Virus record (IMG/VR): IMGVR_UViG_3300030673_000004
Coordinates: 62,001-126,000 of that record
DNA: 64,000 nt
Reading direction: 5' to 3' (one strand)
Positions 6,431-48,704 of this stretch are shown in pieces. How positions within the stretch are numbered: the first letter of the stretch is position 1; each line of letters opens with the position of its first letter. The translations under genes and the position numbers were made by a program. The notes under the pieces were generated by a model that made no database searches, had not been told where the DNA came from, and saw nothing but the letters and a program-made list of their open reading frames with translations.

Positions 6431-6925
6431 TCAAACAGAATTACGCTGTCTCAACGAGTAGATCGTATGATAGGGCTGCCCCAGTTCCTGGGCTATCTGC
6501 ATTGTCGTCATACCTTTGGCAACTAATTCAAGCACTCGTGGAAGTTCTTCAGAGGGCTTCTTACGCGCCTTAGACGTACCGGAGATCAACCTACTGCGAC
6601 GAGGCACCCGCAGGCGATTTTGACGGCAGTAATGGTCTACATAGGAAAAATCACGACCAACCTCAGAAGCAATCTCACCGACGGTACGACCTTCAGTAGC
6701 TAACGCCTCAATACGTTGATGAAGTTGTGAAATGCTCTCTTGTCGAAAGATACCGTAGCTCTGAACAATCTGACGAACACGCTCACGGGACAAGGAAACG
6801 CAGCACCCAATATCGTCATAAGTAGCACCACTCTTAGCTAGTGCTAATATAAAAGAATCTCGCGAATAGCTACTAGAAGCGCTACCACCAGAAGAGTCTA
6901 CCCTATTCTTATCAAGTGTATCCAT
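6431..6925 (-). CDS. Multi-HTH DNA-binding protein
   Basis: GATYDDIGCCVSLSRERVRQI (sigma region 4-like HTH) plus two further HTH-like segments (GRTVGEIASEVG, GMTTMQIAQELG). Confidence 0.75.
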   Translation of the reverse strand: MDTLDKNRVDSSGGSASSSYSRDSFILALAKSGATYDDIGCCVSLSRERVRQIVQSYGIFRQESISQLHQRIEALATEGRTVGEIASEVGRDFSYVDHYCRQNRLRVPRRSRLISGTSKARKKPSEELPRVLELVAKGMTTMQIAQELGQPYHTIYSLRQRNSV

Positions 6926-30187: not shown

Positions 30188-30263
30188 GCCGCGCATTAGT
30201 CTAAATGGTAAAGACATTCCGGAATCATTCCGGAAAATGTTGGTTCGAATCCAGCACGTGGCA
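30188..30263 (+). ncRNA. Atypical tRNA-like RNA with TCA at the tip of a palindromic anticodon arm
   Basis: D-arm GTCT/AGAC, T-arm GTTGG-TTCGAAT-CCAGC, acceptor with a 2-nt bulge; anticodon arm TTCCGGAA-TCA-TTCCGGAA. Confidence 0.7.
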
Positions 30264-30264
30264 T

Positions 30265-30360
30265 GATGGGATAGCTCAATTGGTAGAGCGGCTCGCCCCC
30301 TTTAGGGATCGGGTGTGAAGGAGACTTCGTCGGTTGATGGTTCGAATCCATCGCTCATCT
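30265..30360 (+). ncRNA. Atypical tRNA-like RNA with expanded anticodon region and long variable arm
   Basis: GATGGGA..TAGCTCAATTGGTAGAGC; GCTCG[CCCCCTTTAGGGAT]CGGGT; variable arm GTGAAG-GAGA-CTTCGT; GATGG-TTCGAAT-CCATC. Confidence 0.7.
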
Positions 30361-34159: not shown

Positions 34160-34512
34160 GGGGGTGTATTGGTTTCGACAGATTCTGTGAGAATGATAGC
34201 GCGTGTCGAGGGTCCAGGTGGCCTCGTAAAAACCTGGAAAAAGTCAAACGGCGAAGAGATCTACTCTTACGCTCTGGCTGTCTGAGAAATCAGATACCAG
34301 AACCTTGCAATGAGATGCTGTTGTAGTTGCTTGGTATAATCTAGACGGCTGGGTTACAGTAATGTTTGTAGTCTGTAACTAAGAAAATCAAACTACGGTG
34401 TGTATGAGTCTGTTCTTCGACGCATGCGCAGTTAAGATCAAAAGAAGAACTACACACGTAGTGTTTTCATTTAAGTAGTTTTTGGACGCGGGTTCGAGTC
34501 CCGCCACCTCCA
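34160..34512 (+). ncRNA. ssrA: tmRNA; tag (A)GEEIYSYALAV at 34250-34285
   Basis: GGGGGTG TATTGGTTTCGAC 5' end; GACGCGGGTTCGAGTCCCGCCACCTCCA 3' end with G3-U; internal tag ORF ending ALAV-stop. Confidence 0.95.
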
Positions 34513-34545
34513 TTGTGTAAATGAGATCTATTTAAGGAGATCTCT

Positions 34546-42349: not shown

Positions 42350-42559
42350 ATGTCAGTTGAATTTATCTATGAAGAAGGATGTCTTCAGGCTGAAGAGGAA
42401 ATCATTTCTGAAGTACGTGAAATTCTACGTGCTCGGGTGAAGGCAGAGGCTATTAAGTCTGATGCCCGAGATGCCAAAAATAGACTTGTTGTTAAGAAAG
42501 AACATGTTCCTGATCTATCTAAGATAGGTTCTCATCTATTTGACGTGATTTGCTTGTAA
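42350..42559 (+). CDS. Small hypothetical protein
   Basis: GGAG RBS; 69 aa. Confidence 0.65.
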   Translation: MSVEFIYEEGCLQAEEEIISEVREILRARVKAEAIKSDARDAKNRLVVKKEHVPDLSKIGSHLFDVICL

Positions 42560-42572
42560 ATTTTAGACTTAA

Positions 42573-44138: not shown

Positions 44139-44333
44139 ATGCTTTTGGGATATTTTAGCATGACGGCTACTCTCCAAAATATAAAGTATTGGTTGATCTA
44201 TTCTTCTGTGATTTTTATTTTGCTTTTAGGTTTGTTGCACTATTTAGATATCTTGAGCCTTTTAGGCATATCTGTTGTTCTCAGGTACTTGTGCGGTATT
44301 TGCAATAGTATTTATAGGAATACCTGTCGTTAG
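44139..44333 (+). CDS. Small hydrophobic protein
   Basis: 64 aa, two hydrophobic stretches. Confidence 0.4.
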   Translation: MLLGYFSMTATLQNIKYWLIYSSVIFILLLGLLHYLDILSLLGISVVLRYLCGICNSIYRNTCR

Positions 44334-44338
44334 CCTTT

Positions 44339-44421
44339 GGAGAAGTCGCTCAATTGGTAGAGCAGCACTCTCGAAAAGTGCCGTCCTAACGGATCTGTGG
44401 GTTCAAGTCCCTCCTTCTCCG
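44339..44421 (+). tRNA. tRNA-Ser(CGA)
   Basis: GGAGAAG/CTTCTCC G73; GCACT-CTCGAAA-AGTGC. Confidence 0.93.
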
Positions 44422-44545
44422 CTCTGTGTGCCAAAGGTGCTATCCACGCATTTTCGACATATTTTGTGTTTTTGCCTTGACAAGCCTACATGTTTACTCT
44501 ATTTTTCAAGTATCGTTCACCCTAACCTTACTCGAAAGTTGGTTC

Positions 44546-45226
44546 ATGTACGCTGCTAAGGTAGTTAAACTTGATTTGGATAATGCTGGTATTCGTGTTA
44601 TCCCGTGGGAAGAGGCGGAGAGGCTGCAGGTTGCTATGAAGGAGCAGTTTGGTACTTCCTTGCGTGGCTTTTCTCATATTTCAAAGAAAGCCTGTCCTAC
44701 ATTGGAGACGATGTGCTCTTTGAAGCTGTCGTGTGGCACCGTGAGCATCCCCTTTGCTTCTGTGCCTGAGTTGTACGAGCATATCACCCGAGCTGTTGAT
44801 CGCAAGACTTGGAAGCATCGGTCTACTAAGGAACTCCTGAAAGACTCTAAGTGGCGTGCTGCTCATCCGGAGCGTGTTAAGAGTCTTAACACCTCATTAC
44901 GCAGCGAACACACTGCTGTCGTTACAACCGCTCCTACTCAGACGGCTGCTGACTCTACACCAAGGGCCGACGTTCTGTCTCTGGCTACTGCTATTAGCGA
45001 CTCAGGAACATCCGCTCTTTTTGATGCCCTGTCTCGTTCTGAGCAGGAACGTCTTGTTTTTGTTGTGTACAAGACGGGTGCTTATACCTATGATGGTCTT
45101 GCTGAGTACCTCCATGTGTCTACTCAGGTGATCAAGAACAACCTGTGTCAGTATAGGAAGCATCACGGTATTCCCCCTCTGCCATCTGGAAAGAAATCTA
45201 TGAATGTTCTTTCGCTGAACATTTAA
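44546..45226 (+). CDS. Hypothetical protein with C-terminal HTH, paralog A
   Basis: Start re-set to MYAAKVVKLDLDNAG; GAYTYDGLAEYLHVSTQVIK HTH. Confidence 0.75.
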   Translation: MYAAKVVKLDLDNAGIRVIPWEEAERLQVAMKEQFGTSLRGFSHISKKACPTLETMCSLKLSCGTVSIPFASVPELYEHITRAVDRKTWKHRSTKELLKDSKWRAAHPERVKSLNTSLRSEHTAVVTTAPTQTAADSTPRADVLSLATAISDSGTSALFDALSRSEQERLVFVVYKTGAYTYDGLAEYLHVSTQVIKNNLCQYRKHHGIPPLPSGKKSMNVLSLNI

Positions 45227-45232
45227 GTCGTT

Positions 45233-45319
45233 GGAAGCGTAAAGCGTAATTGGTTGACCGCCCTGGTTTAGAAAACCAGTATCCGAAAGGGTTTGTAGGT
45301 TCGAGTCCTACCGCTTCCG
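45233..45319 (+). tRNA. tRNA-Ser(AGA)
   Basis: GGAAGCG/CGCTTCC G73; CTGGT-TTAGAAA-ACCAG; variable arm ATCC-GAAA-GGGT. Confidence 0.9.
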
Positions 45320-45349
45320 TTTTTAATTCACCTGAACTTGAGGTATCAG

Positions 45350-46000
45350 ATGCGTATCAATAAACTTATCCAGTTTGACTTGGATAATGCTGGAACTTAT
45401 GTTGTTAGCTGGGATGAGGCTTGCGCTCTCCATACGGCATTACAGCCGGTTGCGTTCCAAGTCCGTAAGCTTCCTACAAGTGTCGATACTAAGGTGTGTT
45501 TGGCTACATCCTGTACTCTACAGTTGGCTACTACATCTACTGTAATTCCTTATGAGCAAGTTCCTGCATTGTATAATGCTCTGTCTGAGGAACTGGGTAT
45601 CAAAACTGCGCGTAAGGGCCGACGCAGATCTTATGATGAGTTGCTTGCTGATGTCTCTTGGTGCTCTAAGAATCCAGATCGTGTCAAAAAGGCTCGTGAG
45701 TATGTTCAGAGACGCCGCTTGTCTGCAGTGGTTCCTAAACGATCAGCACCCACAATTGCTCTAGCTCAACAGATTCACGAATCGGGCTCATCTCTTTTGT
45801 TTCACTCGTTGTCTCAAGGTGATCGTGATGCTATGATTTCCGGGTTGTATAGCACAGGATCCTATACATATAAAGAGCTTGCTGCTTATCTCTGGGTGTC
45901 TATTAGTACCATTCAGAAACACTTACAGCAGTATCGTCGGTGCTCTGGGCTGCCTAAGTATATAAGACCTACTAGAGCTGATCTCACTCTGGCTTTGTGA
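45350..46000 (+). CDS. Hypothetical protein with C-terminal HTH, paralog B
   Basis: MRINKLIQFDLDNAG; GSYTYKELAAYLWVSISTIQK; colinear with paralog A. Confidence 0.75.
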   Translation: MRINKLIQFDLDNAGTYVVSWDEACALHTALQPVAFQVRKLPTSVDTKVCLATSCTLQLATTSTVIPYEQVPALYNALSEELGIKTARKGRRRSYDELLADVSWCSKNPDRVKKAREYVQRRRLSAVVPKRSAPTIALAQQIHESGSSLLFHSLSQGDRDAMISGLYSTGSYTYKELAAYLWVSISTIQKHLQQYRRCSGLPKYIRPTRADLTLAL

Positions 46001-46007
46001 TATTCTT

Positions 46008-46306
46008 GGGCCTTTAGCTCAGTTGATTTGTAAACATGAGCTTGGAATCAAGATGTAGGTAACGCATACGAAAAGTGCAGAGACTAACGCCCTATGCAAT
46101 TCGCAGTAACAACTACATTAGTGCTGACATCTATACCCGTTGTGCTGCTGTAGTTTATTAGTCTTCAATAATGCACAAGTTTCTGTAAATAATAAGTGTG
46201 GGGATTGCAGCTCAATGGTTCGTAGCACCGGCCTTATAAGCCGTTGGTTGTGGGTTCGACTCCCATCAGTCCCACTTGGTCCTGGGTTCAAGTCCCAGAA
46301 GGCCCA
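46008..46306 (+). pseudogene. Split tRNA: 5' piece 46008-46025 and 3' piece ~46277-46306 around a ~250-nt insert
   Basis: GGGCCTT-TA-GCTCAGTTG pairs with TGGTC-CTGGG-TTCAAGT-CCCAG-AAGGCCC-A; its own anticodon arm is absent. Confidence 0.8.
46201..46274 (+). tRNA. tRNA-Ile(TAT), nested inside the split tRNA
   Basis: GGGATTG/CAGTCCC A; CGGC-CTTATAA-GCCG; GTGGG-TTCGACT-CCCAT. Confidence 0.85.
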
Positions 46307-46348
46307 CTTGGATTGTAAATAACTCTTAACTTTATGTTTGGAGTTTTT

Positions 46349-46741
46349 ATGATGCCTCTTACGTTTACAATAGATTTTGATGGTACTTGTGTAGATCACA
46401 GGTTTCCTAGGATAGGTCCATCGCTACCTGATGCTGTAGAAACAATGCAGGAGATGGCTCGTAGAGGTCACCGGCTGATCTTAGATACTATGCGCTCTGA
46501 TTTTGAGGGTCCCTATCTAACTGAGGCTATTGCTTGGTTTCGCTCTAATGACATTCCACTGTTCGCTGTTAATGAAAATAAGGAACAGTTATCTTGGACA
46601 ACAAGTCCAAAGATTCACTGTGACTACAGCATAGATGATCGAAATTTGGGATCACCTTTAATGCAGGTACCTTGGATGAAGAGCCCTGGTGTTGACTGGG
46701 AGCAAGTACATGCTTTGTTGTTGCAGGATACTCGGTACTAG
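46349..46741 (+). CDS. HAD-superfamily hydrolase
   Basis: IDFDGTC, LILDTMR, AVNEN, SPKIHCDYSIDDRNLG. Confidence 0.88.
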   Translation: MMPLTFTIDFDGTCVDHRFPRIGPSLPDAVETMQEMARRGHRLILDTMRSDFEGPYLTEAIAWFRSNDIPLFAVNENKEQLSWTTSPKIHCDYSIDDRNLGSPLMQVPWMKSPGVDWEQVHALLLQDTRY

Positions 46742-46744
46742 CTT

Positions 46745-47038
46745 ATGGCACGCTCTACGTTTCCTATAAATTCAGCTATCCTTGTATTTGAACAAGGATC
46801 TTCTGATTTTAAGCGTGCTACATCTGCTGATAGCTTGGTAGCATCTATGTCCGATGTGCTTCAAGATTTGCGCAACGTAGTAAAGCATGATAGGTTACAG
46901 TCTGGTGCCTTTGACTTCAGTCGGCTATCTGAGAAATATGATGTCTCCTTAGCTACTATCCAGTGTATTGTTGATGAGGTTCGTCGTGGCATGTATGAAA
47001 CTCTAAGTAATCAAGGTATTGATATAGATTCAATTTAA
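46745..47038 (+). CDS. Hypothetical protein
   Basis: 97 aa in the gene run. Confidence 0.65.
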   Translation: MARSTFPINSAILVFEQGSSDFKRATSADSLVASMSDVLQDLRNVVKHDRLQSGAFDFSRLSEKYDVSLATIQCIVDEVRRGMYETLSNQGIDIDSI

Positions 47039-47325
47039 TGAAAATCTGGGAGGACTTGATGTCACACGATTCTTTACACATGCCAGAGTGTAACTTTCCG
47101 CATGGTGACTTAGGTCAGCCCGGTTGCATTTGTATTGTTGCAAATCGTAATTATGTCAAAGATCTTGAGGATAAAGCTTGTGCTTTTGAGCAGATTAAAT
47201 CTGTTGTTGAAAAGCTGCAGCAGGATTTAACGCAGAAGCATTATAATCGCTGGGATTGCTTAGACGCAGCTATGCGAATAATTGATGTTGCTTCTGTTGC
47301 TACAACAGGAAAGTACGTAGACTAA
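47038..47325 (+). CDS. Hypothetical protein
   Basis: 95 aa, overlapping stop/start. Confidence 0.6.
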   Translation: MKIWEDLMSHDSLHMPECNFPHGDLGQPGCICIVANRNYVKDLEDKACAFEQIKSVVEKLQQDLTQKHYNRWDCLDAAMRIIDVASVATTGKYVD

Positions 47326-47326
47326 A

Positions 47327-47399
47327 CGCGCATTAGCTCATTAGGTAGAGCGGGATTTTCATAAGGTCTAGGTGGCAAGTTCGAATCTTGCATGCGCGA
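47327..47399 (+). tRNA. tRNA with CAT anticodon (elongator Met or Ile2)
   Basis: CGCGCAT/ATGCGCG A, paired 1-72; loop TTCATAA; weak anticodon stem. Confidence 0.8.
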
Positions 47400-47449
47400 C
47401 TTTAGTTGTAAATAAGCCTTGTACCATTAACTACGAGGCACATATATAT

Positions 47450-47887
47450 ATGTCAGATGAGTCCCTTACAAAAGTTCAGCATCGTGTATCTTCTATCCTG
47501 CATGTGCAGGTGGGTGAATCAGGTGTCTGGGAGCCTACTACAGATCAGCTTGATGCTCTAGTCAGTCAGTTTGTTTCGGCAGTAAACACAAATGTAGCTC
47601 TTGCAGTAGTAGCTACTCGTAAGGGCGTGACTGCTCAGTGTATCCATATTCCAGATACCGATGCTGCTATACTGCATGTTGAGGCAGGCGCACCTGGATG
47701 GGAGCCGTTACCATCCGAGCTTAAAGATCTAACAGATTTGTTTGAGAAAGCAGCTACTTCTGACGGTAGTATTGCTGTAGTAGCTACTCGTACCGGTGTG
47801 ACTGCTCATGTTGTGGATTTATCCAATCCTGATTCTGAGGCATTTCCTGAGTTTCTATATGACACTGATTGCGAGGATGCGTCATGA
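47450..47887 (+). CDS. Protein with two tandem ~60-aa repeats
   Basis: ILHV..G..G.WEP....L..L...F..A.....AVVATR.GVTA occurs twice. Confidence 0.8.
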   Translation: MSDESLTKVQHRVSSILHVQVGESGVWEPTTDQLDALVSQFVSAVNTNVALAVVATRKGVTAQCIHIPDTDAAILHVEAGAPGWEPLPSELKDLTDLFEKAATSDGSIAVVATRTGVTAHVVDLSNPDSEAFPEFLYDTDCEDAS

Positions 47888-48561
47888 ATCTCTATGAACA
47901 TGCTGTGAGCGAATTTGAGTTGCTTGAGCAGAATTTGGACAGTGATCCAGATAAGCATCCTATCATTTTAGAATTCAAAGCTGAAATTCTTTCTCTAGTT
48001 AAGCGTTTTGCGGACTCTGGTCCATCTGGTGGTTCTGCTCCCTTTTATGCGTCTGCCGTATCTCGGGCTATTAAAGATCTCTTTATGTTTGATCCTATTG
48101 GTCCCCTCACAGGAGATGATAGTGAGTGGGTAGATACATCTGAAATTAGTGGCCTGTCTGAAGGAACGCTATGGCAGAATAAGCGGCTATCTTCTGTGTT
48201 TAAGGATGGTAATGATCCGGCTCATTACTTGGATGCTGTTGTATTCCAAGGTGAGTCTGATTATGATCGTTTCAGTGGTCATGTTGATAATGTTTCCAGT
48301 GTTTGGTGTATTAAGAGTTTTCCTTTTAGACCCAAAACATTCACAATAGACGTGTATCGTGTTCCTAGTGAGACAGATCCAGATCGTGTCAGTTGCCGTG
48401 AAGGTGATTATTTATACCACATTAAAGATCCTTCACAGTTAGAGGCTGTTCGCGACTACTATGATGAGAAGATATCTCGGATATCTTCAATAGACTCAAC
48501 ATCGGCTGTAGGCGCGCAAGTTGATGCTGTTTGCTGCCCAAAGACAGTAAAGTTGGACTAA
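47884..48561 (+). CDS. Hypothetical protein
   Basis: GAGG RBS; GPSGGSA, PIGPLTGDDSEW, WQNKRLSSVFK. Confidence 0.75.
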   Translation: MNLYEHAVSEFELLEQNLDSDPDKHPIILEFKAEILSLVKRFADSGPSGGSAPFYASAVSRAIKDLFMFDPIGPLTGDDSEWVDTSEISGLSEGTLWQNKRLSSVFKDGNDPAHYLDAVVFQGESDYDRFSGHVDNVSSVWCIKSFPFRPKTFTIDVYRVPSETDPDRVSCREGDYLYHIKDPSQLEAVRDYYDEKISRISSIDSTSAVGAQVDAVCCPKTVKLD

Positions 48562-48574
48562 TTTTGTTTGCATC

Positions 48575-48603
48575 TTGACATTTTCAGATATTGGTAGTAT
48601 ATT
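48575..48603 (+). promoter_or_regulatory. sigma70 promoter
   Basis: TTGACA-17-TATATT directly upstream of tRNA-fMet. Confidence 0.75.
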
Positions 48604-48609
48604 TCTTTT

Positions 48610-48682
48610 AGCGGGATAGAGCAGTTGGTAGCTTGCTTGGTTCATACCCAAGAGGTCGTTGGTTCAAATCCAACTCCCGCAA
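48610..48682 (+). tRNA. Initiator tRNA-fMet(CAT)
   Basis: A1:A72 mismatch, GAGCAG..GGTAGC D-arm; CTTGG-TTCATAC-CCAAG (only two of the three G-C pairs). Confidence 0.85.
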
Positions 48683-48704
48683 CTTTTCTTAGTGCATACT
48701 TAAA

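What the first reader, a model, noticed from the sequence alone, without database searches (positions are those of the whole stretch)
46008..46311. A tRNA nested inside a split tRNA, supplying Ile(TAT)
Seen: the outer 5' piece GGGCCTTTAGCTCAGTTG and outer 3' piece TGGTCCTGGGTTCAAGTCCCAGAAGGCCCA form a perfect 7-bp acceptor but lie about 250 nt apart. Between them are a 175-nt structured segment and a complete tRNA-Ile(TAT); CCCACTTGG follows both 3' ends (46271, 46303). Established: bacteria normally read AUA with lysidine-modified Ile2(CAT); Ile(UAU) is rare. Inference: the outer halves resemble Ile2/Ile genes, so an incoming cassette may have replaced a TilS-dependent tRNA with a TilS-independent one; alternatively the nested fold is processed into two products.
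Basis: partly seen in the sequence, partly recalled or inferred. Interest (0 to 1): 0.75.

Follow-up and report, generated by a model that had tools for sequence, protein, structure and literature searches.

The report
Broken phage tRNA-Ile2 gene holding tRNA-Ile(UAU)
In a 375-kb phage, a gene for the AUA-reading tRNA that needs the host enzyme TilS has had its middle replaced by a gene for an AUA-reading tRNA that does not; the two outer ends are most likely dead leftovers, not a working split tRNA.

Summary
An 18-nt tRNA 5' end (46008-46025) and a 30-nt 3' end (46277-46306) form a perfect 7-bp acceptor stem around 175 nt of spacer and a complete tRNA-Ile(TAT) (46201-46274). Independent assemblies give the same sequence, so it is not a chimera. 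An uninterrupted tRNA with identical outer halves, found in an apparently unrelated viral contig, has anticodon CAT. Its G3-C70, C4-G69 and C5-G68 pairs mark it as tRNA-Ile2, which needs TilS. Nucleotides 19-43 (D-stem 3' strand and the whole anticodon arm) are missing, so no processing can rebuild the outer tRNA.

The spacer folds no better than shuffled sequence, matches no Rfam family and is unique in the genome. A near-identical strain has deleted the 5' piece and kept the inner tRNA. Two sister lineages have erased or truncated the same Ile2 gene in other ways, and one carries a different tRNA-Ile(TAT) elsewhere.

Best reading: only the inner tRNA works, from its own promoter-like TGTAAATAAT motif, and it serves frequent AUA codons (31% of Ile codons). 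The phage encodes no TilS. This is a neat but ordinary case of tRNA turnover in a phage tRNA array.

The parts
45338..46000 (+). Upstream 220-aa ORF. It is a paralogue of 44426..45226 and has a weak sigma-70 region-4-like helix-turn-helix. Its stop codon is the left anchor of the variable locus.
   Evidence: About 85% nt identity to lineage C up to 46005.
46008..46025 (+). Outer 5' remnant of a tRNA-Ile2(CAT) gene: acceptor 5' strand, U8, A9, D-stem 5' strand and the start of the D loop (tRNA nt 1-18).
   Evidence: 18/18 identical to the intact tRNA at L002:5301-5318. The same piece, 23 nt long, sits at the syntenic site in lineage D1.
46026..46200 (+). 175-nt spacer brought in with the inner tRNA. 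It is unstructured, unique in the genome and absent from relatives. It starts with a degenerate copy of the array's TTTGTAAA motif.
   Evidence: z = +0.63; no Rfam family; unique; no match elsewhere.
46184..46193 (+). Promoter-like motif TGTAAATAAT, 17 nt upstream of the inner tRNA. Function is inferred.
   Evidence: TGTAAAT is intergenic 22 times on the + strand against 6.4 expected. The same motif lies 18 nt upstream of tRNA-Pro and of lineage C's tRNA-Ile(TAT).
46201..46274 (+). Inner, complete tRNA-Ile(TAT). The anticodon is at 46235-46237, the discriminator is A73 and no CCA is encoded. It is the only AUA decoder the phage encodes.
   Evidence: (56.2 bits).
46277..46306 (+). Outer 3' remnant of the tRNA-Ile2(CAT) gene: variable loop, T arm, acceptor 3' strand and A73 (tRNA nt 44-73).
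   Evidence: 28/28 identical to L002:5347-5374. Lineage C keeps only a decayed CAGA(C/A)GGCC(C/G).
46001..46145 (.). Segment missing in a near-identical strain from a freshwater metagenome (haplotype B). It is bounded by TTGTG microhomology, and its loss removes the outer 5' piece.
   Evidence: table 5 and record 18 (joint 46000->46146). Record 19 keeps 46264-46486 unchanged.
46314..46323 (+). Conserved TGTAAATAAC motif upstream of the 129/135-aa gene (46334..46741). It is the right anchor of the locus.
   Evidence: (conserved in lineages A, C and D).

Best explanation
The locus is a phage tRNA-Ile2(CAT) gene whose nt 19-43 (D-stem 3' strand and anticodon arm) were replaced by about 251 nt of foreign array DNA (46026-46276). 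That DNA is a spacer with a promoter-like TGTAAATAAT motif followed by a complete tRNA-Ile(UAU) gene. Only the inner tRNA is functional. It is probably transcribed from its own motif, cut by RNase P at 46201, trimmed and given CCA at 46274, charged by IleRS, and reads AUA without lysidine. The outer 5' and 3' pieces are a young pseudogene remnant. Both junctions lie at TTG/TTGG microhomologies (D-loop GTTG; CTTGG against the variable loop TGGTC), which suggests break repair or illegitimate recombination with a tRNA-array donor. Shown: the anatomy, the Ile2 identity of the outer gene, the absence of the anticodon arm, the dispensability of the 5' piece, and the variability among relatives. Inferred: promoter use, processing, Ile charging, the recombination mechanism, and that redundancy with tRNA-Ile(UAU) allowed the loss of Ile2.
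For: The intact twin with identical outer halves has anticodon CAT. G3-C70, C4-G69 and C5-G68 are Ile(CAT) discriminators (PMC1635315). By the same rules the window's two CAT tRNAs are elongator Met (47327: C3-G70, no A11) and initiator (48610: A11-T24, G12-C23), so the phage has no working Ile2. ARAGORN with introns of up to 400 nt finds no outer tRNA. The spacer is unstructured, unique and matches no Rfam family. Haplotype B lacks 46001-46145 but keeps the inner tRNA end and the 3' piece. In lineage C (about 85% nt identity in the flanks), 290 nt are replaced by 22 nt, leaving only a decayed 10-nt 3' remnant, and a different tRNA-Ile(TAT) sits next to tRNA-Pro. Lineage D1 keeps 23 nt of the same 5' end, followed by an unrelated 88-aa ORF. 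D2 has no trace. Working tRNAs (Met1, Met2) differ at only one position each between A and C, so this locus is not behaving like a conserved RNA gene. The phage has no TilS domain. AUA is 17.5 per 1000 codons and 31% of Ile codons.
Against: Both remnants in the window are undecayed: no differences from an intact tRNA over 46 nt, and perfect acceptor and T stems. That fits either a very recent event or selection on the pieces. The predicted fold of 46008-46306 closes the outer acceptor stem. No donor of the cassette was found. No intact Ile2 gene was found at this site within the clade. Lineage C's 22-nt filler weakly resembles the window's left junction (18 of 500 shuffles score as well); if that is homology, the junction would be older than I assume. 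Haplotype B rests on one 246-nt contig at depth 4.8. No RNA data were available.
Confidence: 0.8

Rival explanations
1. The nested fold is functional. The outer halves pair into an acceptor/T-arm minihelix (a tRNA-like handle) around the inner tRNA. This handle either guides RNase P, RNase Z or the CCA-adding enzyme, or stabilises the precursor, or yields a second small RNA.
For: The 7-bp acceptor and 5-bp T stem are perfect and undecayed. The minimum-free-energy fold closes the outer stem, and the whole 299 nt has z = -2.7.
Against: The outer gene has no anticodon arm and no D-stem 3' strand. The z-score is explained by the inner tRNA and the remnant stems, since the spacer alone has z = +0.63. 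A near-identical strain deleted the 5' piece. Lineages C, D1 and D2 lack the arrangement, and C's own tRNA-Ile(TAT) has no such frame.
Confidence: 0.07
2. The same relic arose by a different route, with no insertion. Two copies of Ile2(CAT) once flanked the tRNA-Ile(TAT). Two microhomology deletions (D-loop TTGG to trailer TTGG, and trailer CTTGG to variable-loop TTGG) then left a 5' stub of one copy and a 3' stub of the other.
For: The sequence after the 5' piece (GTTGATTTGTAAAC) resembles the trailer after the outer 3' end (CTTGGATTGTAAAT). Microhomology deletion does occur at this locus (haplotype B).
Against: It needs two identical gene copies and two deletions. The shared TTGTAAA is a recurrent array motif, so the resemblance is weak evidence. 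Lineage D1 shows a single Ile2 5' end at the syntenic site.
Confidence: 0.1
3. The insert is an intron (group I or other), and splicing restores a working outer tRNA, as in the Azoarcus tRNA-Ile(CAU) gene.
For: GTGCAGAGACTAA at about 46073-46085 resembles the group I R element, and a TTAGT that could pair with its ACTAA follows a small hairpin (recalled consensus, a lead only).
Against: No group I or other ribozyme family matches even at E <= 10. The space for a P4-P6 domain is about 23 nt. The break is in the D loop, not the anticodon loop. 25 nt of exon are missing, so splicing could not give a tRNA.
Confidence: 0.02
4. The arrangement is an assembly chimera.
For: tRNA repeats often break or misjoin metagenome assemblies.
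Against: The sequence is identical in the IMG/VR record, an ENA assembly, a JGI assembly and two Logan run assemblies.
Confidence: 0.01

Closest known systems
tRNA-Ile(UAU) decoding of AUA without TilS (Mycoplasma mobile, Taniguchi et al. 2013, PMC3575796; Bacillus subtilis tilS-deletion suppressor, Koehrer et al. 2014, PMC3919564)
   Same: A tRNA-Ile with a TAT anticodon gene takes over AUA reading in place of the lysidine-dependent tRNA-Ile2(CAU). Here the replaced gene's remnant is still visible around it.
   Different: The carrier is a phage whose host presumably still has TilS and Ile2. The phage gene is an extra supply, not the sole cellular system. Wobble modification, IleRS charging and AUA/AUG discrimination are untested.
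tRNA arrays of large phages, with gain, loss and truncated tRNA genes (established knowledge; seen here in the relatives)
   Same: The genome is 375 kb, with 34 tRNAs and a tmRNA clustered in about 27 kb. tRNA content differs between close lineages.
   Different: The displaced and incoming genes read the same codon by different chemistry, and the incoming gene sits inside the old one.
tRNA genes interrupted by insertion sequences (IS605- and IS607-type TnpB elements)
   Same: In sister lineages of this phage, a TnpB element splits the Ser-like tRNA (L018). A resolvase+TnpB element splits tRNA-Met (L014).
   Different: Those are clean insertions that keep every tRNA nucleotide. In the window 25 nt are lost, there is no transposase, and the insert shows no similarity to those elements.
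Bacterial tRNA group I introns (Azoarcus tRNA-Ile(CAU), cyanobacterial tRNA-Leu)
   Same: A tRNA-Ile(CAU)-type gene is interrupted by about 250 nt.
   Different: There is no ribozyme signature and the position is wrong (D loop to variable loop, not the anticodon loop). Exon sequence is missing.
Split or permuted tRNA genes of archaea and algae
   Same: Two tRNA halves with a complementary acceptor stem are separated in the DNA.
   Different: Those halves together carry the whole tRNA and have processing motifs. Here the anticodon arm does not exist anywhere in the locus.

Membership tests
tRNA-Ile2(CAU), lysidine-dependent (outer gene) | Acceptor-stem discriminators G3-C70 (excludes Met and fMet), C4-G69 and C5-G68 | tested here: met
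   GGGCCTT / AAGGCCC, judged by the rules of PMC1635315.
tRNA-Ile2(CAU), lysidine-dependent (outer gene) | Anticodon CAT | tested here: inconclusive
   The anticodon is absent from the window. It is CAT in the only intact tRNA with identical halves (L002), but that tRNA is not at a syntenic site.
tRNA-Ile2(CAU), lysidine-dependent (outer gene) | Complete cloverleaf (a working gene) | tested here: not met
   nt 19-43 are missing, and ARAGORN with introns of up to 400 nt finds no outer tRNA. It is a pseudogene remnant.
tRNA-Ile2(CAU), lysidine-dependent (outer gene) | Substrate of TilS | not testable with these tools
   This needs an enzyme assay on the intact twin.
tRNA-Ile(UAU) (inner gene) | Canonical tRNA fold above the Rfam threshold | tested here: met
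   56.2 bits against 29. It has C8 and two stem mismatches (C13xU22, C27xU43).
tRNA-Ile(UAU) (inner gene) | Anticodon TAT in a 7-nt loop, with an anticodon stem-loop like bacterial Ile(TAT) genes | tested here: met
   The loop is CTTATAA. GGCCTTATAAGCC is identical to that of Ile(TAT) genes in Gemmataceae, Pirellulales and Chloroflexi genomes.
tRNA-Ile(UAU) (inner gene) | Charged with Ile; reads AUA and not AUG | not testable with these tools
   This needs aminoacylation and decoding assays.
Group I intron in a tRNA gene | Ribozyme core recognised by a covariance model; insertion in the anticodon loop; exons complete | tested here: not met
   No Rfam match at E <= 10. The break is in the D loop and 25 nt are missing.
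Split or permuted tRNA gene | The halves together encode the whole tRNA | tested here: not met
   The anticodon arm is absent.
tmRNA-like RNA (acceptor and T arm around an insert) | tmRNA covariance-model match and a tag reading frame | tested here: not met
   The only tmRNA match is at 34160-34515. Nothing matches at 46008-46306.
Insertion-sequence interruption (IS605/IS607) | Transposase or TnpB, or element ends, within the insert | tested here: not met
   No ORF of that kind is present, and the insert has no similarity to the elements found in relatives.

The most novel reading that the evidence does not exclude
The arrangement may be more than debris, in one of two ways. (a) In this phage clade, tRNA genes may be preferred landing sites for cargo. 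Four different insertions into three tRNA genes were seen, and two of them lie 5 nt apart in the Ile2 D loop. The promoter-plus-tRNA-Ile(UAU) unit would then be a small mobile cassette that targets the gene it makes redundant. (b) The undecayed outer minihelix may be kept because it helps the embedded tRNA to mature.
Probability: 0.1. Interest if true: 0.6.

Novelty: new member of a known kind. Interest (0 to 1): 0.33.

Why it matters
The locus preserves both the old and the new solution to one decoding problem: a TilS-dependent AUA tRNA physically overwritten by a TilS-independent one. The phage uses AUA for almost a third of its isoleucine codons and encodes no TilS. With the sister lineages, it shows that AUA decoders in this phage clade are being exchanged and lost repeatedly, and that phage tRNA genes are frequent targets of insertions. 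This bears on how phages gain independence from host tRNA modification. It does not reveal a new mechanism, and tRNA-seq can settle the functional question.

Tried and rejected
1. Group I intron. An R-element-like GTGCAGAGACTAA and a possible P7 pairing caught my eye, but Rfam gives no ribozyme match at E <= 10, there is no room for P4-P6, and exon sequence is missing.

2. An outer tRNA with a long intron. ARAGORN with -i0,400 and lowered thresholds finds only the inner tRNA and a spurious reverse-strand call.

3. tmRNA-like RNA. No match at this locus.

4. Integration (att) site. There is no integrase, and the 3' piece does not repeat the inner tRNA's end.

5. Insertion-sequence remnant. No similarity to the TnpB elements found in relatives.

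6. Sigma-70 promoters or terminators in the spacer. No more than shuffles give.

7. Searches that found nothing. The 'phages' collection with 2.5 kb in distant mode. The search for related loci with both flanking proteins in viral contigs. Exact scans for the spacer core and for the inner anticodon arm in viral contigs. The intact outer tRNA in bacterial genomes. The metagenome scan returned only the same genome.

8. Homology between lineage C's 22-nt filler and the window's left junction. Suggestive only: 18 of 500 shuffles score as well. Left open.

9. Two D-loop breakpoints 5 nt apart in lineages A and D1 as evidence of a hot spot. I estimate the chance at about 14% for two random hits in a 74-nt gene, so this is not significant.

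Full report
**Context.** The window is bases 62001-126000 of a 375,537-bp viral record with direct terminal repeats, rated complete. All 34 tRNA genes that ARAGORN finds in the genome lie inside the window. A tmRNA lies at 34160-34515 (178.7 bits). The DNA occurs in peat and freshwater metagenomes. It is a very large phage with a tRNA array.

**The observation.**
- Direct reading confirms GGGCCTTTAGCTCAGTTG at 46008-46025 and a 175-nt stretch at 46026-46200.
- A complete tRNA-Ile(TAT) lies at 46201-46274 (Rfam 56.2 bits against a 29-bit threshold; cloverleaf; anticodon at 46235-37).
- CTTGG follows, and then a tRNA 3' portion runs to 46306: variable loop TGGTC, T arm CTGGG/TTCAAGT/CCCAG, acceptor strand AAGGCCC and discriminator A.
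- The two acceptor strands pair perfectly over 7 bp.
- CCCACTTGG stands at 46271-79 and at 46303-11.
- The one descriptor that fails is 'structured'. The 175-nt spacer folds no better than dinucleotide shuffles (z = +0.63). It matches no Rfam family at E <= 10 and has no second copy in the genome.

**Not a chimera.**
- The 1404 nt at 45338-46741 are 100% identical in an ENA assembly (L012) and a JGI assembly (L013) of about 375.6-375.8 kb.
- Logan assemblies of two separate peat runs each give a 9683-nt contig that covers 44300-48700 without a difference.
- Some of these samples may be the source of the window.

**Identity of the outer gene.**
- A scan of viral contigs for the two outer halves separated by a normal tRNA distance found one hit, in an apparently unrelated, AT-rich 96.6-kb contig. 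It is a 74-nt tRNA whose first 18 and last 28 nt are identical to the window's pieces and whose anticodon is CAT.
- CAT tRNAs can be initiator, elongator Met or Ile2. Silva et al. 2006 (PMC1635315) report three rules. G3 or C70 excludes Met and fMet and indicates Ile. C4-G69 and C5-G68 are frequent in Ile(CAT). A11-T24 with G12-C23 marks initiators.
- The outer gene has G3-C70, C4-G69 and C5-G68, so it is Ile2 type.
- By the same rules, the window's CAT tRNA at 47327 (C3-G70, C11) is elongator Met and the one at 48610 (A11-T24, G12-C23, a 1x72 mismatch) is the initiator.
- The phage therefore has fMet, Met, Ile(GAT) and Ile(TAT), plus a broken Ile2.

**What is missing.** Compared with the intact twin, the window lacks nt 19-43: the rest of the D loop, the D-stem 3' strand and the entire anticodon arm. 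The replacing DNA (46026-46276) is about 251 nt. ARAGORN allowing anticodon-loop introns of up to 400 nt finds no outer tRNA. No cutting or joining of this transcript can therefore yield a decoding outer tRNA.

**Relatives.** The downstream 129/135-aa gene and the upstream 216/220-aa gene have homologues only in a narrow clade. Their contigs give five states of the same locus.
- **A.** The window, L012 and L013.
- **B.** A near-identical strain in a freshwater metagenome. One contig joins 46000 directly to 46146, at a TTGTG microhomology. This removes the 5' piece and 120 nt of spacer. Another contig keeps 46264-46486 unchanged.
- **C.** L007-L011 and L021, with flanks about 85% identical. 46006-46295 is replaced by 22 nt, and only a decayed CAGA(C/A)GGCC(C/G) survives from the tRNA's 3' end.
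- **D1.** L014, L015 and L017, whose 129-aa protein is 84% identical. The Ser-like tRNA is followed after 7 nt by the same 5' end, here 23 nt long (through GGTTAG). An 88-aa ORF found nowhere else follows, and no 3' piece is recognisable.
- **D2.** L019 and L020, with no trace of Ile2.

Working tRNAs (Met1, Met2) differ at only one position each between A and C. The behaviour of this locus is therefore that of dispensable DNA.

Lineage C carries a different, well-formed tRNA-Ile(TAT) (64.8 bits) between a PIF1-type helicase gene and tRNA-Pro. That site is empty in the window. The available 11 kb of D1 shows none.

**How it most likely works.**
- The motif TGTAAAT is enriched in intergenic DNA on the coding strand (22 observed, 6.4 expected).
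- It lies 17-18 nt upstream of the inner tRNA, of lineage C's tRNA-Ile(TAT) and of tRNA-Pro. It also lies upstream of the conserved 129-aa gene in all lineages.
- I infer that it is a phage promoter element, and that the inner tRNA is transcribed from its own copy (46184-93), matured by host RNase P and 3' processing with CCA addition, and charged by IleRS.
- AUA makes up 17.5 per 1000 codons and 31% of Ile codons in 191 long ORFs.
- The phage has no TilS-type PP-loop domain, while all 14 control genomes do.
- A UAU anticodon removes the need for host lysidinylation of a phage-made tRNA. These steps are inferred, not shown.

**Origin.**
- Both junctions sit at short TTG/TTGG matches: D-loop GTTG on the left, and CTTGG against the variable loop TGGTC on the right.
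- A C-T-T trailer is common after tRNAs of this array.
- This fits repair of a break in the Ile2 gene from a tRNA-array donor, or illegitimate recombination.
- A two-copy, two-deletion route cannot be excluded.
- No donor was found.
- The window's remnants are undecayed, whereas lineage C's are decayed. This suggests the event in lineage A is younger than the A/C split. A weak resemblance between C's filler and the window's left junction (18 of 500 shuffles) leaves that open.

**Comparison with known systems.**
- TilS-independent AUA reading by tRNA-Ile(UAU) is established in Mycoplasma mobile (PMC3575796) and in a B. subtilis suppressor (PMC3919564).
- Ile(TAT) genes with the same anticodon stem-loop occur in Planctomycetota and Chloroflexi genomes.
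- Group I tRNA introns, split or permuted tRNAs, tmRNA and insertion-sequence interruptions were each tested and not met (see the membership table).
- Relatives do show true IS interruptions of other tRNA genes.

**Verdict.** This is a new, tidy example of a known kind of event: turnover and pseudogenisation in a phage tRNA array, with a known alternative AUA decoder.

Noticed in passing
window 45235-45317: A long-variable-arm, Ser-like tRNA that only Rfam calls (29.5 bits, just over threshold). Its 7-nt anticodon loop reads TTAGAAA, giving anticodon AGA. It is conserved with 1-2 changes per 30 nt in lineages C and D while the flanks diverge by about 15%, so it is probably functional.
   Followed up: partly
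L018:23-80 and 1481-1510 (also L016:659-688): In a sister phage lineage the Ser-like tRNA is split in its variable arm by an IS605-type element. The element has a subterminal hairpin and a 428-aa TnpB (OrfB_IS605 / Cas12f1-like_TNB).
   Followed up: partly
L014:4463-4513 and 6441-6470 (= L024): In lineage D1 the elongator tRNA-Met is cleanly split between its variable loop and T stem by a resolvase + TnpB (IS607-type) element, with TGTGA at both junctions.
   Followed up: partly
window 30191-30263 and 30265-30360: Two odd adjacent tRNA-like genes. The first is sub-threshold (27 bits) and has an anticodon loop AATCATT (anticodon TCA, opal-suppressor-like). The second is 96 nt long with about 36 nt in place of a normal anticodon arm, and ARAGORN gives it an undetermined anticodon.
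   Followed up: partly
window 34160-34515: A phage-encoded tmRNA (Rfam 178.7 bits) inside the tRNA array. ARAGORN did not report it.
   Followed up: no
genome-wide; e.g. window 34516, 38407, 41034, 42555, 46184, 46314, 48881: The motif T(T/G)TGTAAAT(A) is enriched in intergenic DNA on the coding strand (22 against 6.4 expected). It typically lies just after tRNA/tmRNA genes or 17-35 nt before tRNAs and ORFs, and is probably a phage promoter element.
   Followed up: partly
window 44426-45226 and 45338-46000: Two paralogous ORFs (266 and 220 aa) with a weak sigma-70 region-4-like C-terminal helix-turn-helix. Each ends a few bases before a tRNA or tRNA remnant. The 220-aa query (45338-46000) found homologues only in this narrow phage clade (lineages A and C); the 266-aa copy was not searched. 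Lineage D lacks the second copy.
   Followed up: partly
window 47869-48561 and about 49276: A homologue of the Thoeris inhibitor Tad3 (Pfam E = 6e-24) and a free-standing HNH_3 endonuclease ORF (279 aa) lie within the tRNA array.
   Followed up: no
L021:6154-6227 versus window 42545-42572: Lineage C has its own tRNA-Ile(TAT) directly before tRNA-Pro. Both genes begin CGGG..T.TAGCTCA, so a deletion between these similar 5' ends could explain its absence from the window.
   Followed up: partly
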